Shown piece after piece: positions 5,601 to 25,400 of a stretch of 64,000 nucleotides of DNA. Source of the DNA: Stylophora pistillata. Its lineage: Eukaryota. Position numbers and translations under genes: made by a program. How positions within the stretch are numbered: the stretch's first letter is position 1; the number at the start of each line of letters is the position of its first letter. The stretch is taken from positions 152,333 through 216,332 of the forward strand of contig NW_019218050.1 in assembly GCF_002571385.2 (NCBI RefSeq), given 5' to 3'. A model generated the notes under the pieces. It saw nothing but the letters and a program-made list of their open reading frames with translations, ran no database searches and was not told where the DNA came from.

Positions 5601-8600
5601 TCAAAATAGCTCTCTTTTTTTTTTTGTCAGAGTTGTAGATAAAGAGAAAAATACCCATATATTAGTTATTTAACTTCCAAAGAGCATAAAAGGTGCTTGT
5701 TAGTTTGTTGTTACACTTTTAAGAGGTAGGATACAAAATTTTGCAGATAAAGTTAGAAATATTCCAAAAACTTTTCCATCAGATTGTGTATCTGTTCTCT
5801 GCTGATTTATAGTTTAGAAGGGAAAAAAAATATGAAATGAGATTTACATTTGTGTTCTGAAAATCACCTGAACAGCCACTAGAACAATAATTTACTCTGG
5901 GCACATTGGACATTGTTGAATAATCCGCTAGACCTCATCCAAGGGATTATATTCACTTTCAACAAATTTTCAAGTATTGTAAGCATCCAATGGTCTTTTG
6001 TTCTTATTTCAGGCAGCTAGTATTGTGAGAACTGTGGCTCTAGCCTTCAAAGCCATTGGCAAACTAACCAGAGAAAAAGTGGAAAGGGAATCACGTAGGG
6101 CTAGAAGAACTTACTCTGTCAGTAGTTCTGAGCGTACTCGCACTAACTCTGAAGTCTCAACAACTTCTACAATTGGCAGTTCATCTCTAGAACATAGACA
6201 TCCTCATGTAAAGTGGAAACATGGCATTGAAAGTTCATCTGGTCGGAGATCTCCTCATGGGAAGAAATATACCAAAAGTTCCACCAGTCCCTCTATTCTT
6301 CGTCATCCCACCAGTACACACACTTCCGGACGGCATGTTGAATTTTCTGCATTGTCACCTGTGCCTTCTGATGGTAGTGACAGCGATGGCAAGGAGGCAT
6401 CTGCTCTGCAGTTAAAACAACCTCTTCTCAATTGCCAAATCTCTGTTCAAGCTGATATACATACATACCCATCCACTGAGGACGAACCTCCCATATGGGT
6501 GAAAAGAGCAGAGCCAATGAGAAGGACTGGTTTGTCAGATGTGGAAAATGATGCAACTAAGGCTAGTTCTTCAAAACATGAACCATCTATGAGATTTAAC
6601 CACACAGAAGAAATGCAACCTCAGTTTTCAGAGCCTATCATTGCAACAGAAAATTCACCCCCTACGCTTTCTCCTCCAATAAAACAAAAGAATAATTTTT
6701 CAGGTGATTTTTCTGGGGACAGAAAAATTAGAAAAAGTAGGAAGCTGGAGCTGCAGGAGGTCCCAGAGAAAAATTTGAGAGAATATGACACCTCAGTTTG
6801 CATTGAGAAGGAAGTTGCCACAGAAAACTTTGTCGTGCCTTGGACAACTGCTCTCCTTCCCAATGAGACCTTTCAAAAAGACACTGTTAACTCCCCCGAT
6901 AGTCTATCATCAAATTTTGCCAAGTACAGAGGAAATCAACCTCAAGACATGTCCTTACCTTTGTCTGACAGTGAAGGACCAGAAGATCTTGATGCAATCC
7001 ATGATACAGTAGCTGCTGTGCAAAAAGGGGAAAAGACAGTTGTTGAGAAGTTTATTGACAGTGGCATATCTGTAGATTCCCATGACTCGGCTAGGAGAAG
7101 TTTATTATACTATGCTGTGTCGCTAGGTGATGTAGAGATGTCACAGTTTCTGTTGAAGAGGTGAGAGCATATAATTATGTTTTCTCTTGTAGTCAATAGT
7201 AATTATGGTTGTTGACAGAGGATTGGCATTTCCTTCAGACCTCTACAAATCAAACACTTCAATCATAGATCTACAGCTGATATGTTTCTCTCAGAAATCA
7301 CTTCTTTGTTCTAGTTTTTGCAACTGTTTCTTTATATTTAATTGGATATTTTAGAATGCCCCTTGATTAATTAAGTGTCATAAAACTGCAACCAAAGGAA
7401 TGACTGGTTAGATCACAACAACCTAAAATATCAAAACGTACCAATGGAAACTTGCAACAAACCCAAAAAACTGTGTCAAATGCAGGAAATTGCTCATGAC
7501 CAAGTTGCAGTTAGTTTTGGTTAAATTGCATTTGGTAGGTTATTGTCGGAGAGAACAGCAAATTTGTGGACTAGTAATATACAATGGTGAAGCAATCCCA
7601 GAGTACTACCTACACTCAAATAAAAAAATGCTCTGTTTGTTGTAAAAATAAAATCTTAACCAAGTCTCGAAAATTTAAAAATGGGTTACCAATTTTTCTG
7701 TTGCATCTGCCAGAGAAACAACCCCCATCTCTTGTGTTGATTTGAACTAAAACACTTGTGATTTTGCAGTAGCAAGCTTTGCCATGGGTTAAAGAGTCAA
7801 AACTGTTGAATATACACATATCTTATTAGACGTTTTGTTGTGTAGTATCGCTTAGTATTTTTAATAACAGGTTGTTGTACTTTGACGAGCCCGTAGGGCT
7901 AGTCAAAATACAAATAATGAGCAAAAGTACTCGATGATACTACACAACAAAATGTCTAATAAGAGATAGAGATTTATTATCCAAACATGACAGGACGGAA
8001 AACGCGTGCTCTGTAAGTACCTCCGGTTGTCCCATACAAAGCCTTGGAAAACTTTTCTAAGGCTTTGTATGGGACAACAGGAGGTACTTACAGAGCACAT
8101 GTTTTCCATCCTGTCATGACACCAAATTGTTATTTCAGTGTGGGCAAATTTCGTGGATATTTCTGTAGTACAAATATCGCGTGATATTTGTACTCGTCTC
8201 GTGCATTATTTGTACTCTCTGAAGCACAATTAAATACTAGTGTTTCATATTTATTAATTTAAATTTGTATTCTCATTGTTATTTCCCTAGGGGTGCAGAT
8301 ATAAACTGGGAAGGACCAGATGATAAGTCTCCTCTGCACGTTGCAGCATCAGCAGGAAACAGAGCTGTTACTCAGTTACTTCTTGGTTATGGAGCAAATG
8401 TTAGAGCTAAAGACAACAACTTGTATGTATTTACTAGATTTTTAACATCTGATTTTAATTTGCAAATTGGAGTATGAACTGCAGTAAACTACTTAGTAAT
8501 TCTTTTTGTGACCTCTTAAATTTGACAAACATATTGCTTTGTATTTTAAGTTTTTTTCCCCATTGGTTTATATATGGTTAGTTTTAAATTATGATTTATA

Positions 8601-10187
8601 GACATTTCTTGAATTTCCCTTTGATTTTCTTTATACTTCTGTTCTTTTCACAATACACTGAAATTTTTATAATCTCTTGAAATCTAAGGAAAAAGTGAAC
8701 AACAGAGGAAAAATTTGTGAAGCATTGATGGTTATTATTTATTGATGGAATTATTTTTTTATTGAATACTCTCCTCAAGATTCTTTGGTCAGAAGTTCTG
8801 TGTAATTCATGTCTTTACCTTGGTCTTGTAGTTGTACACCACTTCATATGTCAGCTGAACACAGGAGCAAGTTGGAAGTGTCCATCCTTCTGGTAGAACA
8901 TGGAGCAAGAATCTATGAGAACAATATCCATGGGGTGCGACCAGTTGACCTAGAACCGGTATGATTCTCTTCATTTCTTGACTGTGCTTATGTGGATGTG
9001 AAATTTTCAAGTGAAATTTGTGAGTGAGATGGTGAGGAATCCACCATGGGAGAGTGTTTACAGTCTTACTGAGCTCTACTTTGTAGCCATCAGCTACCAA
9101 CTTTAGTCTTTGGGAAACTTGTGTAAGTTTTGCCTTTAGAAATTCTTGTAAGAACTGGGCAAGCTAGATTTCTTAGACAAGGTACCGCCAATGAATTTAC
9201 CAGGAGTATGGTCTTGTTTTGTCATGAAATTGTTGCTCGTGAAGATGGGGATAATTACTTTCAGCTCACTTTTTTCACTGGTGGCAGGAATCTTAGAGAA
9301 ACACCCAAAAAATGACCTCCTAGAAATCAGATGAATAAATTTTTTCATTTGCCTTGTGCATTCAATTAATTTTGTATTTATTAGTTAGAGTTATGTTGCT
9401 CCACAGTCGTATGATGAGCTTGAAATTGAATACAGTCAGGGCCGTAGCCAGACTTAAGAATAAGACGAGGCAAGTTTCGGGTCTGGCATGCCTCCCCCAG
9501 AAAATTTTGAAATATAGAGGCTCAGAAATGCTCTTTCAAGCATTTTCTGTGGCACTTTTCTTTAGAAAAGTCCATCTTGGGCAAGTGTGGAAGTTCACTT
9601 TTTTATTGCCGAGCGATACTGGTGCAAAAAAAAAAGGGAAAAGGCCAAAATCAAGACGAGGCAATTGCCTTGTCTTGCCTCATGCTAGCTACGGCCCTGA
9701 CAGTCTGTGACCTGGTTTTGATAGTAGTTTGAGATGCCCTCTTTTTCCTTTTCAAACTGAATTTCCCCCCTCCCCCCCACAGGAGCTTAAAGAGATGCAG
9801 AGACTCCTTGTACAGTCAGCCTGTGAAGCTTTTGCTGCAGCAGACATTACCAAATCGCGATCAAATTCAGGAGCTTCATCAATCAACCAGGGTTCAGTCA
9901 GTTCAAATGTTAAATCTAAGGCTGGTGTGCAGTCACCTGCAACCGAGCGGGTATCTGCTTTACGAAGAGGACTGTTCCAACACAGAAGATCTTCAAGTTT
10001 GTGCTCCATATCGGGTGGGCATGGAAGTCCAGAGACTGGGAGAAGAAAGCACTGTATCAAGAGATCAGAAAGCATTCATATTGCCCGAACGCTGAGTCCT
10101 CTGCTTGGTAATAACCTGTCTTCTTTGTGTATTTTAGAAAGAATTCCAAAATACCTGAGCAGGGGTTGAACTGGGCTATAATTGAAA

Positions 10188-10220
<33 letters not shown>

Positions 10221-10231
10221 TAAGACTTTTC

Positions 10232-10272
<41 letters not shown>

Positions 10273-10371
10273 TCTCATATCTGTACATGGAAACATCTGG
10301 TTTCTTCATACAAAATAAAGTCAAGAAGATTTCTCTAATATCTTGGGAGCCTTTTTTTAATATAACAATTT

Positions 10372-10402
<31 letters not shown>

Positions 10403-13400
10403 TATAGCCAACTCGGCACTACGTGGCTCGTTGGCTATCTATCATCTCATATGCAAAGCCCTCATGGAATAATTGCTAATTAGCTAATCAACTGATTGAC
10501 TAGCATATGATTTGGTTAACCAGATTAACAAGTATTAAAAAACCAGTTTGTGTACCTTGAAACCCTGAGTTAGCACTTTAGAATTGCTTATAAATTGCTG
10601 GAATACAAGAGCACTTTTTTTCAGCCCATGATACTAATGCCAGGCAATTTCTTTACTGAGAGTAGTGCTTGATAATTATATACATAACAGTTATAAGTTA
10701 GACTGGCTAGAACACTTGCTAACAAATTATTGGTATTTATTTATGTGATTTTCTTGTTCTGACAGGGCTAATGCTTGAATGGTCAGCTTTACAAATTCTT
10801 CACTTTGTAGTAAATATACATGTTGTATTGATCACAGAATTAATTTTTGCTTCTTTTACAGCCAATTCTAGAAGAGGGGGCCTTATGCGCATGCATAGTT
10901 TTCACAGAACAACTCAGGATCAAACACAGACTGCTGACATACATGCAGATCAGACAGATCAGAAAAATTCTGCAGACCAGCAGCTTTCTGTTGTTAAACT
11001 AACTGACTCTCTGTTAGAAGGAGTAAACCTCAAAAAAGATTTTTCACGCAACAAAACAGCTATGGAATCAACAGTCGAGCCAAAGGAGACATGCATCTCA
11101 TCTGTAAACACAATAGATACACACACTGCAAATGCAGAAGAACAGAGAATGGATTCTGCTTTGAAGCTCGATCCTCCTGTTGAAACACTTGAGCAGAACA
11201 CAGCTGTAGTAACAATGCACCAATTTCCAAATGATGTTTTAAGTTCTGATTTTCAAACAAGTCCCTTAAAGCAATCATCAGACATGACTGGATCAAGTGA
11301 GCCCTTGCATGCTTCACCTGAAGCCAGTCTTCTCTCTCCTTTCATTCCAAAGAAACGTTCCATTGAAAAACAAAGACCTGTATCAGATCTCATTCAATTA
11401 GGGGAAAACCCAGAGGCTATTGAAGATAAAATAGGTTCAGTGGAAATGAATAAAGATGTTGTTGCTAATAATCTGCCTTCTGAAAAAGTTCAGCCCATAG
11501 AGGAAACCAGTGAAGCAAAAGGATTAGAAAGACAGCTGTCAAATCCTAGGCAGCCTAGTTTGGAGTCAGATCAGTCTGTGGTATGTATGAAATGTAACAA
11601 GTTATTTCAGTGCTTTAAGTAATAAAAATTATGCAAATTACAATGCAAAATCAATCTTAAATACTAATACTCCTGAAAGGATTAAATGTAAGTGACCTTT
11701 ACCCTTTGACCCCCGAAGTGACCTTTACCCTTTCACCCCGAAGTGGCCTTTACCCCTTAACCCCAAAGTGGCCTTTACCTTTTGACCCCGAAGTGACCTT
11801 TACCCTTTGACCACTAAAAAAGTTTACTATCTTATTCCTCCCTATATTACCACCCTGAATCAAGCATGTAGGTCACAGGAATAGCGAAAACAATCATCAA
11901 GTTAAGCTGTTCTTGATTGTTAAACAAATTCTCCTTGTCAGCACCTTAGGAAATTTATGGAGAACAGTATTGAGAATATGCATACTGATATTAGGATGTA
12001 AGAGGTAAAGTGTGGCAGTTGATGTAGACTTTTCTGAAAATTGAAACTGATGCATTTGCCTTTTTGTTTTTTTGTTTTTTTTCTTGTCTGTCAACTGACA
12101 GAGCTGTCGGAGAAGCACATCTGAATGTGAGGATAGCTCCTTTATAAGCACTGGCTCCAACTACATCAGAGATGTTGATCCTTTGATTGACGCTCTTCAA
12201 CCAGTGGTTCATCTGTCAGGCAATCCTGAATGCCACTCCAGTTTACTGGCTTATTTATGTCTTCCTAAAGCATCTGGTCAGCTCATTACCCTATCACACA
12301 TGGACTCTGGCTCATCTCTGATTAACAACCACATTGCAGTGCTGATTGGTAATCTTTTCAATGTGAGTAAAATGTTACTATTTAGGTGTGGATATGCCTT
12401 GTTTAATAGTGGGAGCAGAAGCTAAGATTTTATTTAACTTAATGCAGTTAAAGCATATTGCTAAAAATACACGAAAATAAATGGTTTAAGGGATTTAGAG
12501 AGTGATCTAAAGTAACAGGACAATGTTCTTTGTGTCTGAACAAGAAAGGACACTGGCCATCAAAATTTAGTCAGTGGATTGTCCTCAGTACAGCTAGTGG
12601 AATCTGGTCCCTATACTTTATGAAGGCCTTGTCCCTCAAAAAATTATTGTTTTATTTCAGAAAATCCTATTGAAAACCAGAATAAAGTTAAACTGATGGG
12701 TTACTTTCATTATTTTCATTTCCAGTTTAGTATTGTGAGAGCATGCATGTACTTTTATGAGAACGTTTTGTGCTCCCTCGTCAAATTTAGTGTGCCATAA
12801 TTTGGGAATTTTGCTTCTGATCAACAGCTGGAAGGGGCAGACAGCCGCAAGAGATCAGTTGAAGCTGGCCTCATTGAAACAGTTTTGAAACTTGTGGACA
12901 GTCCTGAACCTATTCAGGTGTGGAATCTTTATTAATGATTACTGGCACTTTGTTTCTATTGGCTCTCAAATTGGCGGATCACTGGGATCTCATGTCAAGC
13001 TTGCATCCACTTTTTGATTTAGACATGCTTTTGATTTCAAGAGGAATATTTACACTGTCATTTTTATTGATTTCATTGTAGCTTTCATTTGTTGTTCAAT
13101 AGGACAAGATCTTCATTTGGTTAGCAACTGCATTTAATTATCTTTGAAATTAAATCATAGAAAGACACTGATTTTGAACACCTTTATCACCTAACACAAG
13201 AACAAGAACACAAATGTGGCTACTTTGAAACAATAGCCAAACAAGATCTCAAAGAGAGGTTGTTTGTTGACAAGTGTTTTATTTTTTTTTACTTTAAATA
13301 GTTGTTGGCTTTAAAACTTTTTGTCCAGGATGCCTACTGTACTTCTAGAATTTTGAAGGATCTAGATCAAAATTAGAGAACCTTGGGCATTCTATGTTAA

Positions 13401-16400
13401 ATTTAGTTGTATTTTGCTCCCCTTATCTTTATGTATGTTATTGTTATTTCTGTACCCATTTTTTGTTTGTGTGGCTCTTAAAACTGAAACACTTGTCTTG
13501 TAACTGAAATGGTTTTGTCTTTTCAGAGCACATGTTTGTCAATTTTACAAAGTATCCTTGACTTCAACAACGATCAAGAATTCTCCACAGCCTTGAAGAC
13601 TATTCCCCTGGAGCCTTTGTTAAGCTTATTGCAGATCAGTGATGTTGACAGTGGTGCATTTGACCTGCGACAGACAGACTCACCCCCTCCTTATCCCTCA
13701 GCCAGTCATGACAGGCAAAGATATCGCAAGAGAAGCACTTGTAGTCAGAGTTCTTGTGATGAGCGGGCGAGAGAAATGTCCCCAATAGTCCAAAGAGGCT
13801 CTGTACAGAGAAATAACTCTGGAGCATCAGATGCGCGATCTGACTTCTGGCCACAACATGGCTGTTATGTGCTGCAGAAAAAGAACAGCATATGCAGTGT
13901 GGGAAGTTCAGCGGATGGGGATCATTCATTCCCTCTCTACAGGTATTCATTCTGTCTTTCTTTTGCAAGACTGAACCAAAATTATTTTCACTGCCATGTT
14001 CAGTGTTCTCCTTTTCAACCTGTAACCAACAGTTCCTCTTATTACCACGTGACATCTTTGGGAATTCTTGAAAATTTAACAGGTGAAAGCATTGCTCTAC
14101 CAGTTTGAAAATTTATTTTACCTGACGTGCTTAAGATTAGGGAGAGCACCACTTGTTGGCCATCTACCATCCCATTATCAGCATATGTATATTGAATAAT
14201 TGTCTAATGAGCTGATGATGATGATGATGATGATTTTTATTTAACTCAGCTCGGTTTTACAGGATATATACGTAATTTCCGGCCGTTTACGCGCGCGGGT
14301 AATCTGTTGATTTTGCCTTAAACACGCGCCACTGCGGGTAATAGGGAGTGCGGGTTATGTGACAATTTTGAAATCTACTGGCGGTTGAATTGAAGAAAAT
14401 TCTCATCTACCTGCGTTTCCACCTCTCAGATGAATTTTATTGTATTAAGAGTGCCACAAAGCGGCACGAAAACTTGATGCCGACTCGAGTTTATTTCACG
14501 CACAGTTAGACTAGGTTTACACTAGAGGAGAGTTTTCCGGATTCGTAAATGTTTCCGGATTCATCAATTTTGGAGTATTCGGATTCGTAGGCGTTTACAC
14601 TGAAAGGATATTCGGATTCCTGACCGTTTACACACAACGACAACTCTGGGAACATTCGAAATGAAATGGTTACCAAGCCCAGTGTTGTTTCGTCGTTCGA
14701 TCGTCAAAGTTNNNNNNNNNNNGTGCGGGTAAACGGCCGGAAGTTACGGTAGGTTAAATTTACATAGCAACTAAACACATTACAGCAAAGGAATAAGCAG
14801 AAAAAAATTAGCAATAGAGGAGGTAGCTTGTTAGGATCATTCAAATAGCAAAGGCTAATCTAGGTATGTCTCTGCAGCCCTGGATTTGGTCATAACCACC
14901 TTCCATTAATGGATCTGCACTCCAAAACAATGCCTAGAGTAGTTGCCACAAAAATGCTGTCAGCCAGCAGTATTCATCCAAAGATGCAGATGGAACTTGG
15001 CAAGACAAGGTACAATAATCTCTTCATTGTAGCTTGATATCTTTATTCCTGTGTGGAATACTTTTTTTTAAAATAAAGGTTCCAAATTGTCTATCAAACG
15101 TTAGCCCACTGAAAAGATGAGTTGTGTTTTATAGGCCACTTTCCTTACTTCTGGACACACTGACAGACGGTAACCCGGAAATTGTGATATACTGTGTTGC
15201 AACTATAGCAAACATTGCAATGAATGTGGACAATCATATGCAGGTAAATGTAAACTGGTTTAATTGGTATTTAAGAATAGGTCCTGTCAGCTAACTGGCG
15301 GTGACTTTATATTCTCATGTATTTTGTAGATTGATTTGGCTGGAGGTGTTGATGGCCTTAAACAAATGCTGAGCTATGGAGATGCAAGGTATCTGTTAAT
15401 GATAATTGTCTTAACTTCAAAAAGGAGCTATACTTTTTTTAAGGATAAAAAACAAAACAAAATACAGTACATATGAAAGATTAATTTGTATAGACTACGA
15501 TTGTCTTGAAGTGTTTTGTTCATTGCACGGGTCTTTTTCAATTTGTTTCTCTCATTCACAACCTTTTATTTTTTCTTCTGTTGACCAGCTTTCTTTAATT
15601 GTGTTGCAGAGTACGATACCATGCCGCTCGTGGCTTAATTTATCTTGGTTACATTGATGTCGGAGGAGTTTATCTCTTTAAACGTGTTCCAGGTAAGTTA
15701 AAGAAATATGTTCCAGTGGTATGCATGGACTCTGAACATTTTTTGGCAGTGTAAATATATGCTAGGTGTTGTAATGAAGGACTCACGCCCTAACCAGGCA
15801 GATAGCAATACACTATACTTCTAGTTGCATCGTGCCTTAGAAACGCAAAGAGTCTTCGGGGCACCTGGCTCGAAAGATTTTAACTTCACTGGTTTGTCTG
15901 CAAACTTCAGGTGATGAAAAGCTTGACGTTTTGTTCTCAGAGTCAACCACTGGAGAGGAACACCTCTATGTCAGGTTAGATAAATAGCAACTGTTACGAA
16001 CGGAAGTGCCAGTACAGTCACGTGGAAGACCAAATTTTCTCTCCTTGATGAGTTACAAAATTTTATAGGTATGGGGCTTCGCTGCGCGCGCGTTGTGAGC
16101 TCCGCTGCGCGCGCGTTGTGAGCTCCGCTGCTATTAATTTCCTGAACTTAAGCTGCTTTTTGCGAACGTTTTTTCTCCCAGGCACAATAAAGGAAGCAAA
16201 GGATTGTAACTCAGATTGCGGAAACATATAACATGATTTTGTTTTGCGTACCTTTTTAGTGTTGGAATCAAATTTGTTCAATGTTGATCAATAGAAGTTG
16301 AATGGTTATGAAGTACATTGGATTTGTAGAGAAATTTTTAGTAAATTTTATTGTTTGACCTGAAGTTTCTATTATTCATCCGTAGAGGGGCTACAGTGGA

Positions 16401-19400
16401 GAAAATCGTTGAGATCATCACTAATAACCCGTCCCTTTTGTGGGGTGGTTTGACTCTACCACCTTGGTCTGGACGCTCAAAGAAACATTCCTGGTACAAA
16501 TCCAGCAGCTCTGGAAACAAACACATGCCTAGTGATGACCACATTGTGGATTTTTTGCTGACAACTTACAAGAGCTATGTACATCCCTCCATCCTTATGA
16601 GATTGCTGCTTCATAGGTAAGCGGGCCGGATAAATCCTGAAATCAACGTTGTAGTATATTATTTTATTACACCACTCGGGCAGTCAGAGGGCCAATAACT
16701 AAAATCAACCAATCAAAATGCTCTATTGCCGGTCCATTATTCTCTAAGTATTGGACCGGGCACTGTCCCGAATGGTCCCGAATGATACCGCACTTGTGTC
16801 CCTTTGAACTTCAGTCGTATAATAAATCTCTTATTAACCAAGCTTGCTCGGGACCGTACTGGAAGAATATCGGCCCTAGGTCTTTTTTGTACGGACCTCG
16901 CTGCGCTCGGTCTGTGCTGTCAAGACCTCGCTGCGCTCGGTCCGTACTGTCAAGACCTCGGGCCGATATTCTCCCAGTACGACCCTCGCGCTGGGTTAAT
17001 AAGATATATATACCACACAGATACCAAAAACGAAGTTTATTTCTCTCAATTTTCCGAAAAGTGGTCGGAAATTATTGTCTCATCGGCTGCTCGGAGGCAA
17101 ATGATTGTAGCTATTCACTTCCGAACTAACCATTCGGTGCGCGCTAAAAGCGCTATTCTCTTGCGTGGTATAAACTAAATTAAGATATTTGACATAGCTC
17201 CCTGAAACGTACTTACATGGTATCGCCAGATTGCTTTTACACCTTATTCCCCTTCAACTTATCTTCGGTCTTTCACTTGTAGATTTCATGACCCCTGGTT
17301 TGGCAAGTACTTTGATGGAGACCCGTCCACTGGGCAGATGCAAGACTACAGTCCACTTCCTGTATTGCACATTCATTTGATGAGATTATGGACAGCCTGG
17401 CTTGAAAAATGTCCTGAAGAGTTTGTTAGTAACCCTGTAATAGCAGTAAGTATCTTTGGTAGTTCGTTTGTAGTTTATTCTAAAGTGATCCTCTCTACTT
17501 TCAACAATTTACTGTTGAAACCTGGTAGTGTTATACATAATTCTTCAGCTCAAGAGAGCGTGTGTTTTTGTTTTTTTTGTTTTTTTTTTTTTTGCGACCA
17601 AATCTCTACAGAGGTCCTACTTGAAAATTAATGCCAGTCACTTTATTTTTCAACTTGGGGCAAAAGCCTTGATTATTGAATGTTGAGATGATTGCGAATA
17701 ATTCGATTAAGACTGGTGCCCCTTGAACACCCCACAAAGAAGTAGTTGTATTTATGAGTTAAGTTATGAAAAGGCATTTTTTTTACCTCAAAAAAAAAAA
17801 AAAAATCTTTATGTAAACATCAATACTGACACGTTTTTCTCACTGCCTAGTCCGAGCTGAACGAAGTTATACATCCTCTAAGAAAGGCTGGTGGTCCCTA
17901 CCTTCCGTGTGCAGAAATCTTGGCAGATCTCATCCAGACCCTGATAGTAAGCCTCACTCACAACAGTTTAATGTCATTTTTCTTGCCAACTGTACGTGCT
18001 TTTTGTTGTTGTTTTTCTTTCTTTTGTGTGCTAAATTTTAAGTTCTAACGGTGTAGACAAGGTATACCTACCAAAGAGTACGGATAGTAGCTCCCGGTGT
18101 TGTGGTCTCGCCTTGTTCCCGAGAAAAATCCAAACTTGGGGGCACTTGCAAAATTCTAAACTACTCACTGCAATCCGGCCAAAGTCCCCCTCAAAGTGTT
18201 GTGAAGCGTAATATAGAATAGTAATATGGAGAATGTGCCATATAAATTTATCATCATCGCCGTCAAACCTTAACGGTTAAAACATCCTTGATTTCAGGAA
18301 AGGGAACGAAAGAAGCACCACCGGGACAGATTCCAGGCAAACCATTGTCACCATGCCATTCTTTATGAACAGGTGAGGAATGAGTCTCAAGCGGTCTTCT
18401 TGGTGAAGAAATGACGAAGAACAATTTAAATAGAGAGTGTAGCAGAAAAAAGTAGTTTTGAAGTGGTGTATCCAGCAAGATGAGTCAACCTCGAGTGAGG
18501 ATTATACAGACCACTCATGTTGATGCTCTCTTTCTGCAGTGTCAAAAAGCAGTCGTAAGCGGAAGCTTGCCTTGTGCGGTTGAGGATTCTATTTACCTGA
18601 GTGCACTACAACTATATATTGAGGTAAGTGGACTAAACTTCGAGCATCTACAAAATAAACATTTGTACTCCGCTTTCAGAGCAGTCTTCAATTGAGTGTG
18701 AAAAAAAAACAAAACTAAACTAATCCCCGCAACCAATCGGAGCAAAGGCTTACATTATCATTAACCAATGAGAACTTAAGGGAAAACAAGCACACTGCTT
18801 AAAGCGCGGGAAAATTAAAGTGCGGGAAGACGCGGGTGGCAGTCGCGATTGTTTTTAGTTTTGAGCAGAGTTTCCCTCGTAGTTTTTGGAAGGTGTGAAA
18901 CAAGGAAATATGGCTTAGTGCGGGTGCGAAGACCTTTGACAAAATAATTCAGACTGGACTGCAGACGATTTCATTACAACGCTATAGAGCGCTTGAGATT
19001 GAGCACCGTAGAAAAAAAGAACAGTTTTAAATTACCTCAGCCAGTCGCAACAAACTGAGGTGTTTGTTTGATTATCGCAAAAATAATCGAGAAGTCGATG
19101 TTACCAAATTTAACCAGAAAGTAACGATTGGTTTAAGTTTGGCATTTGATTGGTAAAGACGGTGGTGGTGCGAGTTTTCTGGACCAATCGAGGGACGAAA
19201 GGCGAAAAACGAAGGTCGACAGTCTGAAACAACAACAACAGAAAAACCACCAATTTAATCTCGTAACATATTTAAGACTAATCTAACAAGTGTTTATAAA
19301 TCTGCACAGGATCTTCTCCCAGTGGAGGTGCGGGGAAAGCAACGTCTCTTTCAACCCTCCAGTAGAGAGAAGTAAGACCTTTTTTACAACATACCGAACG

Positions 19401-22400
19401 CTCTGAAGACACTTTTATTCATTCATTTATCTATTTATTTCGGTTATTTTATTCACTTTTGAACTCTTCTTACCCAGAGATGTTATTTGCGGAAATTGTG
19501 TTTTAGACTCGTCTGTCCTTGATGAAAGTTCATCGTGTTTTGAAGATGTTTTAATTATTCATGCGAATTTTTTTCTAGGTTATCAGTTTCTCGTATCAAG
19601 TTGAGTTTGCATCCATCTATGTAGAAAGTAAAGAATATGGGAAAAAGGTCAGACACATTGTAGTTTTAGATTCACCGTGACTTGTTTGCTTGTTTGGGTG
19701 TTTTCTATGTTAAATTAAATAAAATTAGTGACAGGAGGGGAAGAAAAAAAATCTTGTTGTCAGCGTAAAATTCTGTAATATTTGATTTTCTCTTGTACAG
19801 AATCAAGGCTCAGTACGAACAGTTTGTGACCAGCGGTATGTCGGAGAGGAATGGTAAACACAACTACATCGACTACTGTCAGGCTATGCCAGGATACGGC
19901 TGCCAGTTTTACAAGCTGAAGGTAAGCTTCTGAAACTTGGAAAAACAAATTTACAGGATGTATGTGTACCTTTTTGTTGTTATCTCTTTTTAATCTCTTT
20001 CCGCTGAAATTGCTTGAAATAGAAACGAAGCTGCCAAATTGTTGTTTACCATTCAAGTAGATAATTCTTGTCCGTATTTTATGAGGCTAGTTCACCAGGA
20101 AGTTTGCCACTGTGTGGTAATAAAAGAAAAGTTATGTTCGCTTGCATAAATATGTTTTGGGTTCAACTCAGAGTCACTTTAGCACGAACCGTTACGCGAG
20201 AGTTAAATTGAGTTCTGAGAAGGGCTAAACATATTCATGCCCAAGAATTTAAGTTATATTACTATTATTATCACTTTGAGGGCATGGAGAAAATAAGAAC
20301 TGAAAAAAAAAAATGACAACCAAACAGTCTGAAAATTTTTGCGAACGAGCGAGCGGGCTAGCCCGCCAAAATCTCTATTTCAGCCCTACAAAGTGATAAA
20401 ATGTTTTTTTTTTTTGTTCGTGTATTGCAAATGTCATAGGCGCCAATGAGGTTGAAAGGTTATTTTGAATAGTATTCAGTGGTTTAATTTTGTTATCATT
20501 CGCATTGGAGTGAAGATCTTGCCCACTGCAGCCATATTTATCGTTACTATTTCGAAGAAAAGTTTCTTATTTGTTTATTATATTAATTATTTTACCACGA
20601 GTAAGGGAACAAGAAAAGATCCAATTCTAGGCCACCCTTCTTAATCTATAACTGATTGCTACACGTTTTTGTTGTGTCCTAAGGAATGTTTGGGAACTGA
20701 CAACCCCAGGGGTGGTCCCCTAAGATGTTACTTTGGGGTCAGTCCTCGGAAGATCACAATTTTGGACGAGAAAACAAAGGTAAGAGAAATATGTTATTTT
20801 TTAATTTGGACTTAAAAAAATTGTGTTCAGATGAAGCTACGATACTACGGATAAGGTCTGCAGTGCATAATTCTAGGTCAATATTTCTTTTGTATTGTTT
20901 AAAGAAGAAAATGGAGTGGTATTGTTTCAATTTATTGCACTATTGACTTTTATTAGGCTGTTATTGGAACGTGGCAGTCCAAGGAACTGAAAAGGTGGCG
21001 GTCTTTAGCAGAAGACACCCGACTCCGCTTAGAATTCATTAACAAGACGTTCGAATTTGTGTTAGAAAACAAAGGGTAAGCACCCTTAGTGAGCCTCACT
21101 TAGTTTTTCTCTGTAGGAACTGATTATGTAGTTCTCGAAGTTTTGAGATAATCAGATAATCGATGTGCACTCAGTTGACACTGATGGATTTTGGTTTTCT
21201 TGGTTAGTAATAATTTCCTATTCATTTCAGTGTGTTCAAAGAAATCAATGATGCGCTTCTGCTGTGCACTAAAGTTGAGTTACAGGTGAGTTGACCCTTT
21301 CGGTCGCATTTTTAAGATCACACTCTCGTTCTCCTCTCTTCTTGTCGAAACATGTCCTTTCCTTTCCAAGGAAATATCTCTGAAATGTCCTTAAATTTAT
21401 CCCCAAAGGATGAAGAAGTTCAAATTGTCACCGGGTTTCATGTCTGGTTATTTCAGATTCTTGCGGGGCAGGATTTTTCTCCATGGAGTAAATACGCTGA
21501 GGAAACTGAAATGTGGGGACAACAGGCCTTGGAAGCTGTTGCTCGAAAACCTGCGTTTTACTCTGATAAGTATGAAAGCGACTCAGGGGTTTCCAGATTA
21601 AGGGCTATCTCCTTAGCTTCTTCTGTTCCTGATCAGTATGCAGCTAAAGTGAGAAGGCATCTGTCCACTCTAGCAAAGCTGTCTTCTTCCGCGCCGTATC
21701 AGCAAGGAGCATTACAGCAGAAATGTGACCGAGATGATGTCATGGCTCTAAAGACTAGTGCAGAGGCTGTTTTGCCTGCCACAGGTTTGTTAACAGCGCG
21801 TATGACAATTGCAATAGTGTTGTGTGAACTAATGGATCCTCATTTTAAACTCACAATTAAAAGTCTTGTATTGAAAACTAAGTGAACAAGGAGGTGTTTT
21901 CGAGGTTCATGATTTATAAGCTTTCCTCTTGTTCTCCTGCATCCCCCTTAGTTTCATCACTTCATAGAGCCCGGAAAATGTGTTCTATTGCTGAAATAAT
22001 TTTTTTTTTTGACGTTTCAGGAGCAGCTATCTCAGTTGCTGGCAGTCCTGGCAACGTATCAGTGGCGTCCCATGCATCCGGAGACCTTCTTTTGGGCTCC
22101 TTACAGAGCACTTTAGACCCAAATAAGGGCTCTTGGGAGCCAGGGTCACTTCCGACAAGCGATCAGAGGAGACCATCGAGTAAGGAACTTGACGCGTGTT
22201 TAGGTAAAACTTTGGACGCAATGGCAGAGGGAAGAAAGAGAGAAATGAATAAATAAATAAATAAATAGATAAATAAATAAATGAATAAGCAATTGCAGCA
22301 GAAGTAATAGTGTTGTTTTAAAGCTAAAACAGGCCATGTACCCTATGAGTTTTTCTTCAGCTCTGTTGCTTCACTTGATTTGATGGGTTTCTTAAATTCT

Positions 22401-25400
22401 TTTACGGACAAACTGTTGTTTCATGGATCATCATCTAAATGCCTCATCATTGTTGCAAGATAATTTTGTTCGATGTCTTGAGCCAAAATAATTGAATTTG
22501 GACGGAAGAGGTATCTAGACATTTCTTTCATCGAGTCATCTTCGATAGCGTCATCTAAAAGCTAGCCACTACTACTGAGGGGTTAATCAAGACGTAGTTC
22601 CAAAGTGTTAATTAACTTTCATATGACGAATAGACGAACAGATGGTTGATTAATCTTGTAGGAAGCAGTGAAGCAAGCGCTGATGACTCCAATTCGCCAA
22701 CAGAGCGCCACGCTCTCGACCCTTCGGGCTCTTTCCCTGTGGGACAGGACTTGAGGAATTTGGCATCCAGCGATCGCCGCCCCAAGTATTCAGCAAATAG
22801 TAACGCTTCTTCATTGGGGAGTGATACGCCCAGTTCAGGACAAACCACGCCCACGTACAAGGGACCGTTTAGTTCGACGCTACGCGACGATGACGATTTT
22901 GAAAGTGTAAATCGGTCTTTCGGTCAGAGCTCTAATGGACTGTTGTTAATTTGTCAATGCCCCCCAGACGCTGAGTTGCCGGGATTCGATCGGCGAGACT
23001 TCTCGTAAGTACATCTTGAGTATCGTTAGTAGATAATGTAGAAATAAAAAAAAAGGATGGGTGGGGCGGAGATATAAAGAGGGAAGAAAGAAAGGAAGGG
23101 GCAGTGTCTTTGTGGGTTGCAAGGAAGCTAGCAGCAGAGCGTTTGGGACGAGTTGTGAGAGGGAAGGTGGAAGAGTATTGTGGATCTTAATAGATGAAAA
23201 AGTATTAGAAAAGTTTGGGTTCTATGCTTATTACCTTTCTTATTTCGATGCAGGCCTTTTGACTTGCTTCAACATCCCAAGGAGTTGGCACGACAGATCA
23301 CACTTATTGACCACGGTAAGTACAAAGTACTAGTTTCACACAATGGCCTGCATTCAATTGGTCATATTTTATTGTTTATTTCAACTGAAATCAGCCTGAA
23401 TGATAATTTGACAGATTGTTCTATCTGGTCAAATGAATATCATTGCAAGATGTAGTTCACGAATATGTAGCCCTTCTCGATCTGGTTTGCGAGTTGTCCA
23501 CCAGGAGCTTAGCAATCATTCTCTGTCAGCGGTCATTGTCACCAGTAGAGGCTCGAACGGAACGTCAGCGTTCAGAGCAGTCTGCGTAACACAGCGGTCA
23601 GACGTAAGGCATGCGCAAGAAGCTCAATCTGGGTCGCCCACGCGCCAATTTCCCACTTAAAATTTCTAAAGAAAACATAAACAATCGCTGTCACGCCATT
23701 TTTTTCGGCTTTCTTTTTCAGAGTGTTTCTGTGCAGTGTCGTCAGCTGACATCCAGAAGAAGATTGCCATGGGAACGGGCAAGAAACGGAAGGTGCCACC
23801 TGAAGAAAGACTGTCTGTGGAGAAAGTTGCTGACAGATTCAATCAGGTAATTTAATTAACAAATTTAGCTGTAACTTCTCTACGTGGAGGGCTCTTCGCT
23901 TTGTTTTCCAGGTCCATATTAGAATCTTAAGGCTTTTGGTTTTTGGAAGAGAGGAAAACCGAAGAAATCCGGGGAAAAACCCTTAGAGCAAGAACGGGAA
24001 CCAACACAAACTTGCCCCTCATGTAATGCTGGGAGTCGAACCCAGGCCACAGCGGTGGAGATGAGCACTCTCCCCATAGCACCATCCTTACCTCTCCCGG
24101 CATTCCCCGAACAGCTTGGCGACCACCTTGTCTCTGTGTTTGCTAGTAATTCTACCCTGAAAATAAACGTGGTTTGACTGCAGTATCCAACATTGATATT
24201 CAAAGCTGAAGGAACTTACGGCTTACTGTTCTTTGCATTTTTTTTAGCTGAGTACCTGGGTAGCAGCCACGATTGTTACAGAAAAATCAGTGGAGAAGCG
24301 TGCCACAATGTTCATTAACTTCATCGAAACAGCCAAGGTAATGTCAAACATCCCATGAGCCACCAGGGCTTCACCTCATCCCTCCGCTACTTTTTGGAAT
24401 CCCGAAGTGGATCAATTTGTGACCATTCACCTCGCAAGCCATGTGAGATTAGCACCAATGCCTTATTAGACTCGGCACTACGTGCAGCTGCGGGTGTGGT
24501 TTCTTCTTATCGTTTTACTTTTCTTACTCTCCCAGATGTCTTTTGACATTGTGATGTCTTTTGACATTGTGTTGTCTTCTGAATTTTCAGCTGTGTTTAG
24601 AGTTGAGAAACTTTAACGCTGTAATGGCTATTGTTGTGGCGGCTCTGGGCAGTGCACCTGTGAGACGACTTCACAAAACAAAAGAGGTGAGGCTCCAAGG
24701 CTTGTCCATCGCTGCCTTCCAGAACCAACCTTTCTGTTTCGTCAACCGGTTCACTTCCATTCTAAGTCTGTTCTTAGGCCTTCTGTTTTCATTGAGATCA
24801 TCATTCAGAGCGCGAGCGAAATAAACATCGCAAGGATTTCACAAACGTGAACAGATGGCGATGGAGATGGAGAACGACAAAAGAAGTTTTCGTTCTCCGC
24901 GTTCATTCATGCGCGCATGCCTTACAGGCTTCTTTGCTTAACTCAAAGAAAGGGAACAGCTGGAAACAGACCATTCCTTCCCGCATGGCAAATACTTCAT
25001 TTCTTTTTCTTTGTCAGACGGCCAGGGAAACCATACTATTAGTGCTGACTAGAAGTGTATTTCTATTTTTGTTTTTAGTCAACTTTTCTCAATTTTCAAG
25101 CACTTAGTTTTGCTTAGTTCTTGGTCTAGTCGAATGTTGGCTTCCTAGTTCACGGATGGAGTCACATTCAAACAAGCCGGATAGGTTTTCAGTCTTGTTA
25201 TCTTATACTTGCAGCTCGTTCCCAAAGAAGTCCTAGAGCAGTACGCCAAGATGGAAATACTTATGGATACAAAAGTAAGTCTTGGTTGAGGTAAAACCAT
25301 TATAGCTTAATCGTTTTCCGTTTTGATGATTTGCACCATTTTTGTCTCCTGTGCCTGACTTGGTATTACATTTAAGGAGAAACGACAATCCGCGGCAAAA

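What the first reader, a model, noticed from the sequence alone, without database searches (positions are those of the whole stretch)
18298..21285. Talin-like FERM F2-F3 module without an F1 lobe, inserted between REM and CDC25
Seen: the REM domain ends (...LADLIQTLI) and after about 20 residues FERM F2 begins (ILYEQCQKAVVSGSLPCAVEDSIYLSALQLYIE), leaving no room for the ubiquitin-like F1 lobe. F3 reads KHNYIDYCQAMPGYGCQFYKLKE...RCYFGVSPRKITILDEKTKAVIGTWQSKELKRW. Established (from recall): the talin F2/F3 region reads approximately YVKLARSLKTYGVSFFLVKE...RLLGITKE.VMRVDEKTKEVIQEW.L..IKRW, so DEKTK, W and KRW are shared. Inference: a talin/kindlin-type integrin-binding lobe sits inside the GEF regulatory core, where RA or PDZ domains sit in RAPGEFs. 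It could gate catalysis on receptor-tail or PIP2 binding.
Basis: partly seen in the sequence, partly recalled or inferred. Interest (0 to 1): 0.75.

Follow-up and report, generated by a model that had tools for sequence, protein, structure and literature searches.

The report
Talin-type two-lobe FERM inside a RasGEF
A coral gene for a Ras-family activator carries, between its two catalytic-core domains, a talin-like membrane and receptor-tail docking module that lacks the usual first lobe, and the same cassette occurs from a single-celled relative of animals up to the front half of invertebrate phospholipase C epsilon.

Summary
Window 18298-21285 holds eight spliced exons. They encode a FERM F2 lobe and a PTB-like F3 lobe, and they follow the last REM exon directly. 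RNA from three runs joins 17946 to 18298 with no exon between, so there is no F1 lobe. Orthologues and an AlphaFold2 model agree.

The module is talin-type. A 10-orthologue profile hits talin F2F3 at E 2e-18, kindlin-2 at 7e-13, and myosin VII and KRIT1 at about 3e-5. The structural match to talin F2F3 is Z 18.0-19.8 at 2.3-2.9 Å for most top rows.

The in-frame TAG at 19622-19624 reads TAC (Tyr) in all four RNA runs, so the module is intact in transcripts.

The cassette is not coral-specific. ANK–REM–F2F3–CDC25 occurs in cnidarians, sponges and Capsaspora, and it forms the N-terminal half of protostome "PLC epsilon-like" proteins. My literature searches found no description of it.

Function is inferred, not shown. 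I read it as a docking and orientation unit for PIP2 membranes and NPxY-type receptor tails. Integrin binding and gating of catalysis are untested.

The scan had noted this gene only on this same window (s1-788356, s1-788464).

The parts
2634..28035 (+). Whole gene: PID-type PTB, ankyrin repeats, ARM-like region, REM, F2-F3, long linker, CDC25. Only the part from 17851 to 21785 was checked by reads.
   Evidence: tblastn of P0016 is colinear from 6013 to 28035. Pfam on orthologues. First exon read. Extent agrees with note s1-788356.
16384..17946 (+). REM (RasGEF_N) exons. The last one is 17851-17946 and ends ...LADLIQTLI in phase 0.
   Evidence: Pfam RasGEF_N in 10 of 10 orthologue stretches, best E 5.7e-9. 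SOS2 REM matches at E 2e-4. tblastn. RNA contigs cover 17851-17946.
18298..18372 (+). Exon B: 25 residues, a short basic linker plus the start of the first F2 helix (AILYEQ).
   Evidence: Joint 17946>18298 in X3, X8 and X21 (12 reads).
18540..18623 (+). Exon C: F2 helices (CQKAVVSGSLPC...LQLYIE).
   Evidence: Pfam FERM_M E 1e-6, profile 7-49. Joints seen.
19310..19371 (+). Exon D: variable F2 loop, 62 nt, shifts the phase.
   Evidence: Joints 18623>19310 and 19371>19579. pLDDT is low for this loop.
19579..19647 (+). 69-nt F2 exon with the basic cluster KVKNMGKR. It holds an in-frame TAG at 19622-19624 in the window.
   Evidence: Orthologues have Tyr at that place. G19624 reads C in 4 of 4 RNA runs, 20 of 20 reads in X21.
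19801..19921 (+). Exon E: last F2 helices and the first F3 strand (..GYGCQFYKLK).
   Evidence: Pfam FERM_M E 8.4e-5, profile 77-112..
20684..20779 (+). Exon F: F3 strands (ECLGT...CYFGVSPRKITILDEKTK).
20957..21075 (+). Exon G: F3 strands with the ELKRW motif.
21231..21285 (+). Exon H: C-terminal helix of F3 (VFKEINDALLLCTKVELQ).
   Evidence: (helix 379-400).
21457..23005 (+). Linker exons between F3 and CDC25. They start with the conserved DFSPWSKYAEE..WG motif (21472-21519) and are otherwise Ser/Pro-rich.
   Evidence: Joint 21285>21457. tblastn. Motif count.
23255..28035 (+). CDC25 (RasGEF) catalytic domain exons and the C-terminus.
   Evidence: tblastn of P0016. Pfam RasGEF E 8.8e-56 on P0016. 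PDB RasGRF1 6e-33 and SOS1 3e-27.

Best explanation
Shown:
- Window 18298-21285 encodes a talin-type FERM F2-F3 pair with no F1 lobe.
- It is spliced directly behind the REM domain of an expressed multi-domain RasGEF with the order PTB, ANK, ARM-like, REM, F2F3, linker, CDC25.
- The REM-F2F3-CDC25 cassette predates animals and is also the front half of protostome PLC epsilon.

Inferred: the pair works as a docking and orienting unit.
- The conserved basic cluster of F2 would hold the GEF on acidic (PIP2-type) membrane. That cluster aligns with talin's membrane-orientation patch.
- The PTB-like groove of F3, with KRW kept, would bind a short NPxY-type or similar tail motif of a receptor.
- The neighbouring REM-CDC25 core would then meet its lipid-anchored Ras-family substrate there.

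Which GTPase it acts on is open. The CDC25 scores best with Ras-type GEFs, while the homologous mammalian PLC epsilon CDC25 is reported to be Rap1A-specific.
For: Exon chain and expression:
- Nine joints in X3, X8 and X21, no extra exon, and TAG read as TAC.

No F1:
- P0016 aligns without a gap from the REM end to F2.
- Pfam finds FERM_M in 10/10, RasGEF_N in 10/10 and IRS in 8/10. FERM_N and RA are not among the families listed.
- AlphaFold2 shows only helices up to residue 296, then 7 strands and a helix. Mean pLDDT is 71.3, and most 10-residue blocks of F2 and F3 read 80-92.

Talin type:
- The first 19 PDB rows are talin, E 2.4e-18 to 1.4e-16. Kindlin-2 follows at 7e-13, then myosin VIIb and KRIT1 at 3e-5.
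- Every Foldseek row printed down to rank 23 is talin.
- VIA-align gives Z 19.8 at rmsd 2.6 Å over 194 residues, against KRIT1 14.4 and ERM about 13.

Conserved ligand-side residues:
- K263 and K267 in 10/10, R/K268 in 10/10.
- W354 in 9/10, K-R-W in 7/10.

Antiquity:
-.
- hhalign probability 100 to Capsaspora and 99 to a mollusc PLC epsilon-like protein.

Compactness:
- In Capsaspora about 40 residues separate the end of the F3 alignment (1550) from the RasGEF hit (1591).
- In Mercenaria about 60 residues separate them (1790 to 1850).
Against: No binding or activity was tested.

In the four anthozoan rows, the columns that HMMER aligns with talin K324/L325 hold G/S/A and P/H/Y/V. The numbering is recalled. 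An integrin-activating contact of the talin kind is therefore unlikely to be kept.

The F3 exons alone give no Pfam or PDB hit.

In cnidarians the F3-CDC25 linker is about 270 residues and looks disordered. That weakens any fixed geometry between the module and the catalytic site.

CDC25 similarity is higher to RasGRF1, yeast Cdc25 and SOS than to the mollusc PLC epsilon CDC25 (116 bits against 72 bits). Substrate inference from PLC epsilon is therefore weak.

The model has pTM 0.45, so domain packing is not known.
Confidence: 0.6

Rival explanations
1. Autoinhibitory gate. F2F3 packs on the REM-CDC25 core and blocks the GTPase site until PIP2 or a receptor tail pulls it off.
For: The module lies in the REM-CDC25 connector, where RA or PDZ domains of Epac and RAPGEF2/6 sit (recalled). 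The connector to CDC25 is short in Capsaspora and in the mollusc PLC epsilon-like protein. The cassette is conserved as a unit.
Against: Cnidarians have a linker of about 270 residues after F3. No inter-domain contact could be read from the model, whose pTM is 0.45 and which did not include CDC25. No conserved internal NPxY ligand exists outside the CDC25 NPDF/Y motif.
Confidence: 0.2
2. Structural relic. The lobes are kept only as a folded spacer or scaffold and no longer bind membrane or tails.
For: The talin K324/L325 equivalents are not kept in corals. Identity to talin is only 20-24%. Vertebrate PLC epsilon was not among the hits for this region, and a review says its N-terminus has no homology to other proteins (PMC13022664, passages).
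Against: Invariant surface-type residues (K263, K267, T339, K340, W354 in 9/10) persist from sponge to coral. The module has been retained since before the split of Capsaspora and animals.
Confidence: 0.12
3. Broken gene or assembly artefact. The in-frame TAG at 19622-19624 means the FERM part is a pseudogene remnant or is skipped.
For: The window reads TAG. The exon is 69 nt, so skipping it would keep the frame (note s1-788464).
Against: All four RNA runs read C at 19624, giving TAC (Tyr): X21 20 of 20 reads, X3 and X8 at full contig depth, X1 in one low-depth unspliced contig. Both flanking joints of the exon are used in X3, X8 and X21, and no skipping joint 19371>19801 is listed, though 6 joints were not shown. 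Orthologues have Tyr there.
Confidence: 0.04
4. An ordinary three-lobed FERM whose F1 was missed, either through a divergent ubiquitin-like lobe or an unannotated exon.
For: F1 lobes are often missed by Pfam (recalled). I did not fold the region upstream of REM.
Against: Only 17-25 residues lie between the REM end and the first F2 helix, both in the window and in all 10 aligned orthologues. RNA joins the two exons directly. The model has no strand before residue 303. Capsaspora and the PLC epsilon-like proteins show the same direct REM-to-F2 junction.
Confidence: 0.04

Closest known systems
Talin head F2-F3 (PDB 3g9w, 1mk7, 1y19, 3ivf)
   Same: The two-lobe unit has the same fold and the same lobe arrangement: Z 18.0-19.8, mostly 2.3-2.9 Å over 182-194 residues, and profile E 2e-18. 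The DE-x-TK and KRW motifs and the F2 basic cluster align.
   Different: There is no F0, F1 or rod. Identity is 20-24%. The module is embedded in a GEF. The coral rows lack the K324/L325-type residues (numbering recalled). Binding to integrin, PIPKI-gamma or PIP2 is untested.
Protostome phospholipase C epsilon-like proteins (e.g. P0027 Mercenaria, P0028 Mya, P0046 Limulus)
   Same: The match to ANK, REM, F2-F3 and CDC25 is colinear. hhalign probability is 99, E 4e-18. FERM_M is present in 25 of 26 and PLC-X in 26 of 26. There is no F1 here either.
   Different: Those proteins continue into EF-hand, PLC X/Y, C2 and RA domains. The coral gene stops after CDC25, and nothing in the window matches the PLC half. 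Their REM carries a large insert.
Mammalian PLC epsilon (PLCE1)
   Same: It has a CDC25 domain N-terminal to the lipase, reported to be Rap1A-specific (PMC13022664, passages).
   Different: The two PLC epsilon papers I searched hold no 'FERM' or 'ankyrin'. The review says the N-terminus has no homology to other proteins. No vertebrate protein was among the 26 hits, a search whose reach is limited by shared words.
Epac and RAPGEF2/6
   Same: Extra domains are inserted between REM and CDC25 (recalled).
   Different: Their inserts are RA and PDZ, not F2-F3. Pfam found no cNMP, PDZ or RA domain in this family. Epac was not among the best 60 PDB rows.
KRIT1 (ANK + FERM)
   Same: Ankyrin repeats plus a FERM with a PTB-like F3. 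Weak Ank_KRIT1 and KRIT1_FRMD8_FERM_C hits.
   Different: Those hits lie far under the cut-offs (18 bits against 80). KRIT1 has an F1 that binds Rap1 and has no GEF. The structural Z is 14.1-14.4 at 4.2-4.7 Å, well below talin.

Membership tests
Canonical FERM domain (three-lobed) | F1 ubiquitin-like lobe directly N-terminal to F2 | tested here: not met
   RNA joins the REM exon directly to exon B. FERM_N and RA are not among the families Pfam listed for the 10 orthologue stretches. The model has no strand before residue 303.
Canonical FERM domain (three-lobed) | F2 helical lobe (FERM_M) | tested here: met
   FERM_M in 10 of 10 orthologues, best E 3.3e-18, and on two window exon pieces.
Canonical FERM domain (three-lobed) | F3 PH/PTB-like lobe | tested here: met
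   IRS-type PTB in 8 of 10. Seven strands plus a C-terminal helix in the model. IRS-1 PTB matches at Z 13.2, 2.4 Å over 98 residues.
Talin (protein family) | F0-F1 lobes and a helical-bundle rod with vinculin- and actin-binding sites | tested here: not met
   Pfam on five full-length orthologues shows ANK, RasGEF_N, FERM_M, IRS and RasGEF, plus PID in two, and no talin rod families.
Talin-type F2-F3 module | Nearest sequence and fold neighbours are talin F2F3 | tested here: met
   talin leads in all three.
Talin-type F2-F3 module | Residues of the NPxY pocket (R358/W359, recalled numbering) and of the F2 membrane patch | tested here: met
   The window reads ELKRW. K-R-W in 7 of 10 and W in 9 of 10. 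K263 and K267 are invariant.
Talin-type F2-F3 module | Residues for the integrin membrane-proximal contact (K324/L325, recalled numbering) | tested here: not met
   The aligned columns hold G/S/A and P/H/Y/V in the four anthozoan rows.
Talin-type F2-F3 module | Binding of integrin beta tails or PIP2 | not testable with these tools
   No complex prediction or binding assay was available.
CDC25-family RasGEF | REM plus CDC25 homology domain | tested here: met
   RasGEF E 8.8e-56 and RasGEF_N E 4.7e-7 on P0016. RasGRF1, Cdc25 and SOS are the top GEF rows in PDB.
CDC25-family RasGEF | Exchange activity and substrate (Ras, Rap or Ral) | not testable with these tools
   Catalytic residues were not examined.
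Phospholipase C epsilon | PLC X/Y catalytic core, C2 and RA domains after the CDC25 | tested here: not met
   No PLC or RA family was found on five cnidarian or sponge orthologues. tblastn of P0027 against the window gave nothing. No RA match lies on C266.
Phospholipase C epsilon | Homology of the ANK-REM-F2F3-CDC25 half | tested here: met

The most novel reading that the evidence does not exclude
This gene would be the free-standing form of an ancient, pre-metazoan, adhesion-linked GEF: ANK-REM-talin-type F2F3-CDC25. Bilaterians fused that GEF to a PLC core to make PLC epsilon. The talin-like lobes would place a Rap/Ras exchange factor on receptor tails and PIP2. On this reading PLC epsilon began as a receptor-tail-docked GEF-lipase, and the unexplained mammalian N-terminus would be what is left of the module.
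Probability: 0.25. Interest if true: 0.8.

Novelty: new variant of a known kind. Interest (0 to 1): 0.58.

Why it matters
FERM domains are taught as three-lobed units, and talin-type F3 lobes as the switch for integrins. Here a two-lobe talin-type unit is built into the core of a Ras-family exchange factor. It has been kept since before animals arose, and it is carried by invertebrate PLC epsilon.

If the lobes bind membrane or receptor tails, three things follow:
- There is a direct, single-protein route from an adhesion or NPxY receptor to Ras/Rap activation.
- There is a concrete hypothesis for the origin and for the uncharacterised N-terminus of PLC epsilon.
- There is a tractable experimental system (Nematostella, Hydra, Capsaspora).

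My literature searches found nothing describing this. They cover open-access papers and bioRxiv only.

Tried and rejected
Single-exon searches:
- Pfam on the two F3 exon pieces gave nothing.
- phmmer of three exon pieces against PDB gave only chance-level hits: chorismate mutase, an antibody and a viral glycoprotein, all at E above 1.
- This shows that exon-by-exon searching is too weak for F3. I therefore turned to full-length database orthologues.

A Pfam PH_8 hit (E 0.033) in the open frame 21316-21456 was dropped, because RNA shows the next exon starts at 21457.

I first read the 69-nt exon in frame 0 (VISFSYQ...). I rejected that reading once exon phases, orthologues and reads fixed the frame.

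KRIT1 kinship was considered because of ANK plus FERM. I rejected it on scores.

A conserved internal NPxY ligand was sought and not found, apart from the CDC25 NPDF/Y motif.

A PLC epsilon lipase half in the same genome stays open:
- The best PLC-X match lies on contig C237.
- No RA or RasGEF match lies on that contig.
- tblastn over 90 kb found only parts matching the X-box to C2 span.

The own-genome search with the family profile found only this gene: 8 of 8 matches fall at window 16384-21525. I therefore had no paralogue, and no coral talin, to compare with.

No phylogeny of F3 was made.

P0017 and P0018 were left out of alignment A1 because their gene models have an insertion and a missing REM part.

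The spliced model of the window was never joined. All window searches were exon by exon, and the fold and profile work used stretches of database orthologues.

Supplements of papers were not opened. They might hold domain tables for PLC epsilon or for GEF families that bear on the claim that this is not in print.

Full report
**What is in the window**

The window is eukaryotic, about 39% G+C, with short exons. On the + strand lies one long gene. I worked out the exons of the flagged stretch from the DNA. I checked them one by one without joining them.

- The last REM exon is 17851-17946. It ends ...LADLIQTLI in phase 0.
- Exon B is 18298-18372 (ERERKKHHRDRFQANHCHHAILYEQ).
- Exon C is 18540-18623.
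- Exon D is 19310-19371.
- A 69-nt exon is 19579-19647.
- Exon E is 19801-19921.
- Exon F is 20684-20779.
- Exon G is 20957-21075.
- Exon H is 21231-21285.
- The next exon starts at 21457.

All borders are AG/GT. The finding's coordinates are exactly the first base of exon B and the last base of exon H.

Window sequence was searched exon by exon. Everything that needs a continuous protein was done with database orthologues.

**Transcript evidence**

I laid three RNA contig sets (X1, X3, X8) and one raw-read RNA run (X21) on 17800-21900. The runs are filed under four different study codes.

- X3, X8 and X21 show all nine joints. Adjusted by the offsets the tool gives, they are 17946>18298, 18372>18540, 18623>19310, 19371>19579, 19647>19801, 19921>20684, 20779>20957, 21075>21231 and 21285>21457. 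X21 has 12 to 23 reads per joint.
- In X21 the first mates lie almost only on the minus strand over the exons. That fits a + strand RNA in a stranded library.
- No listed joint places an exon between 17946 and 18298.
- Six joints were not shown by the tool. The other listed joints (18776-18815 to 19165-19167) are non-canonical, lie in high-depth repeats inside an intron, and occur on both strands.
- X1 covers the region only with low-depth unspliced pieces.

**The stop codon**

The window has TAG at 19622-19624 inside the 69-nt F2 exon. Orthologues have Tyr there (HPSMYKV in P0003 and P0016).

All four runs read C instead of G at 19624, which gives TAC:
- X21, 20 of 20 reads
- X3, 173.3 of 173.3 contig depth
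- X8, 84.1 of 84.1
- X1, one contig at depth 4

The module is therefore intact in the transcripts. The G is either an assembly error or a private allele. I could not tell which, because no DNA run of the assembled individual was laid.

**Domain identity from the window alone**

- Pfam FERM_M hits the piece with exon C (E 1e-6, profile 7-49 of 112).
- It also hits the piece with exon E (E 8.4e-5, profile 77-112, 23.3 bits, just under the 23.8 cut-off).
- RasGEF_N hits 16345-16617 weakly (E 0.0019).
- The two F3 pieces hit nothing.
- That is 10 pieces scanned in all.
- Single exons against PDB gave only chance-level rows.

F2 is thus visible in the window itself. F3 needs help from relatives.

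**Orthologues**

A search of 1.84 billion representatives with the 189-residue open frame 21316-21882 found 13 proteins at E up to 0.001. Among them were P0009 (2199 aa, named by its source as Nematostella) and the fragment P0003.

A region search with P0009 found 12 proteins among 1671 candidates:
- Anthozoans: Nematostella, Actinia, Actinostola, Oculina and Acropora.
- A scyphozoan (Rhopilema) and Hydra.
- Unnamed transcriptome entries. One of them, P0024, carries an automatic 'Talin-1' label.

The sources name these proteins only 'uncharacterized' or 'hypothetical', or give no name.

P0016 (Oculina) is the closest, with a mean of 72% identity over 34 HSPs. It aligns colinearly with the window from 6013 to 28035. 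Residues 1389-1642 map without a gap onto the REM-last exon and exons B-H. No orthologue residues are left over for an F1 lobe.

Pfam on full-length orthologues gives ankyrin repeats, RasGEF_N, FERM_M, IRS-type PTB and RasGEF (E about 1e-55). Two orthologues also have an N-terminal PID. Note s1-788356 describes the same architecture for 2634-28038.

**No F1**

Alignment A1 holds the REM-to-F3 stretch of 10 orthologues. P0017 and P0018 were left out for gene-model faults.

- Scanned singly, FERM_M and RasGEF_N are found in 10 of 10, IRS in 8 of 10, PH_SLA1 in 4 and KRIT1_FRMD8_FERM_C in 2.
- FERM_N, FERM_C and RA are not among the five families listed.
- The AlphaFold2 model of the P0016 stretch has mean pLDDT 71.3 and pTM 0.45. 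Most 10-residue blocks of F2 and F3 read 80-92.
- The model is all helix to residue 182 (REM).
- A low-confidence linker follows at 177-187.
- Helices 189-296 are F2.
- Seven strands 303-375 and helix 379-400 are F3.
- There is no beta-grasp anywhere in the model.

**Talin type**

- The A1 profile against PDB sequences gives 68 matches at E up to 10. Of the 60 shown, the first 19 are talin-1 or talin-2 F2F3 (E 2.4e-18 to 1.4e-16).
- Below them come kindlin-2 (7e-13), talin F3-only chains, kindlin-3 (1e-7), myosin VIIb (3e-5) and KRIT1 (3.5e-5). SOS REM domains follow (2e-4 and 0.012).
- No ERM or merlin is among the 60.
- The HMMER alignment shows 'ildektkaviekwnfkdlkrw' against talin 'RVDEKTKEVIQEWSLTNIKRW'.
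- In Foldseek, every row printed down to rank 23 is talin (best E 3.9e-10, TM 0.78-0.80 on the F2F3 constructs). KRIT1, kindlin and merlin follow.
- VIA-align gives Z 19.8 for talin-2 F2F3 (rmsd 2.6 Å, 194 residues).
- It gives Z 18.0-19.2 for most other talin rows, mostly at 2.3-2.9 Å.
- KRIT1 scores 14.1-14.4 at 4.2-4.7 Å, ERM and merlin about 13, and kindlin-2 13.1-13.2 at 6.4-6.9 Å.
- The myosin MyTH4-FERM rows with Z 15-17 have rmsd above 10 Å, because they also drag in the REM helices.

I built no tree.

**Conserved residues**

- In the row-1 numbering of A1, K263 and K267 are invariant, R/K268 is in 10/10 and K/R270 in 9/10.
- HMMER aligns this cluster with talin 'YVKQKGERKIF', which I recall as the F2 membrane-orientation patch.
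- T339 and K340 are invariant.
- W354 is in 9/10 and K-R-W in 7/10. I recall these as R358/W359 of the NPxY pocket.
- The columns aligned with K324/L325 hold G/S/A and P/H/Y/V in the four anthozoan rows. I recall K324/L325 as the integrin membrane-proximal contact.

**Wider distribution**

A region search with P0024 found six proteins. Three were new: a demosponge protein (Dysidea, P0025), Capsaspora CAOG_03360 (P0026), and a 3685-residue bivalve protein (P0027).

- Pfam on P0027 gives Ank 164-375, FERM_M 1535-1707 and RasGEF 1850-2059. EF-hand-like, PLC-X, PLC-Y, C2 and RA follow. That is a PLC epsilon with this cassette in front.
- blastp shows colinear matches of ANK, REM end plus F2, F2 end plus F3, and CDC25.
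- hhalign of A1 gives probability 100 and E 1.4e-42 to Capsaspora, over REM to F3 (columns 5-406 against residues 1165-1550).
- It gives probability 99 and E 4e-18 to P0027. Both show a direct REM-to-F2 junction.
- A region search with P0027 found 26 proteins among 2317 candidates. The named ones come from molluscs, an annelid, a nemertean, chelicerates, a pycnogonid, a springtail and insects.
- PLC-X is present in 26 of 26, FERM_M in 25 of 26, RasGEF in 25 of 26 and ankyrin families in 13 of 26. Several are named 'PLC epsilon-1-like'.
- P0050 sits on a 7232-base contig. That fits one transcript carrying FERM_M, RasGEF and the lipase.
- No vertebrate protein appeared. This search finds only relatives that share exact words with the query.

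**Literature**

- Searches for RasGEF+FERM+talin+ankyrin found 2 irrelevant papers.
- PLC epsilon+FERM+CDC25+evolution found 0.
- Capsaspora+RasGEF+FERM found 2, on other topics by title and abstract.
- CAOG_03360 found 0.
- talin-like+RasGEF found 0.
- In PMC12501065 and PMC13022664 I saw only passages returned by 'find'. Both have no occurrence of 'FERM' or 'ankyrin'.
- The second paper states that the mammalian N-terminus shares no homology with other proteins. It also states that the CDC25 is specific for Rap1A.

**The catalytic end and the rest of the genome**

- P0016's CDC25 scores best with RasGRF1 (6e-33), yeast Cdc25 (6.7e-33), SOS1 (3e-27), RalGPS1 (1.6e-26) and RasGRP1 (5.9e-23). 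The substrate cannot be read from this.
- The coral gene ends after CDC25, and the window holds no match to the PLC half of P0027.
- The best PLC-X match in the genome is on contig C237.
- No RA or RasGEF match lies on that contig.
- Only parts matching the X-box to C2 span appear in 90 kb of it.
- Whether this coral has a separate PLC epsilon lipase remains open.
- The family profile finds only this one gene in the genome.

**Reading**

Shown: this is an expressed, intact, single-copy RasGEF gene. Its REM and CDC25 domains are separated by a talin-type F2-F3 pair without F1, and the arrangement has been conserved since before animals.

Inferred: the pair docks and orients the exchange factor on acidic membrane and on a short receptor-tail motif.

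Gating of catalysis is possible but less supported. Integrin specificity is not supported by the residues kept in corals.

The link to PLC epsilon is the most interesting by-product. It is homology of architecture, not proof of a fusion history.

Noticed in passing
window 19622-19624: In-frame TAG in the 69-nt F2 exon. All four RNA runs read C at 19624 (TAC, Tyr), so the stop is an assembly error or a private allele, not a feature of the gene.
   Followed up: yes
P0027-P0052; P0027 residues 164-2059: Protostome PLC epsilon-like proteins carry ANK, a split REM, a talin-type F2-F3 and CDC25 in front of the lipase. The two PLC epsilon papers I searched do not mention a FERM.
   Followed up: partly
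window 21472-21519: A D[FT]SPWS..AE...WG motif lies directly after the F3 helix. It is kept in all 12 cnidarian and P0024 proteins and is absent in Dysidea, Capsaspora and the three PLC epsilon-like proteins checked. It could be a ligand or docking motif. Nothing was tested.
   Followed up: partly
window 18074-18210 and 18759-18895 / 19165-19189: Intron stretches with very high RNA depth on both strands, many mismatches and loose ends, and non-canonical 'joints'. They look like copies of an expressed repeat from elsewhere, not exons of this gene.
   Followed up: no
G000:C237:80749-91325 (minus strand; L011, L015): A PLC gene whose X-box is the genome's best match to mollusc PLC epsilon (57% over 110 residues). 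No RA or RasGEF match lies on that contig, so its subtype is undecided.
   Followed up: partly
window 2619-3173: The first coding exon has a PTB/PID-like domain. Pfam does not see it in the window piece but does in orthologues P0014 and P0020 (E 2e-7 and 3.5e-7). The protein thus has two PTB-type folds.
   Followed up: partly
window 14712-14722: An 11-base N run inside an intron of the gene. I left it as it is.
   Followed up: no
P0003 residues about 390-528: This fragmentary database model of a close relative runs from the linker into a long tandem repeat (VKSSEEGC units). It is probably a gene-model read-through, not part of the protein.
   Followed up: no
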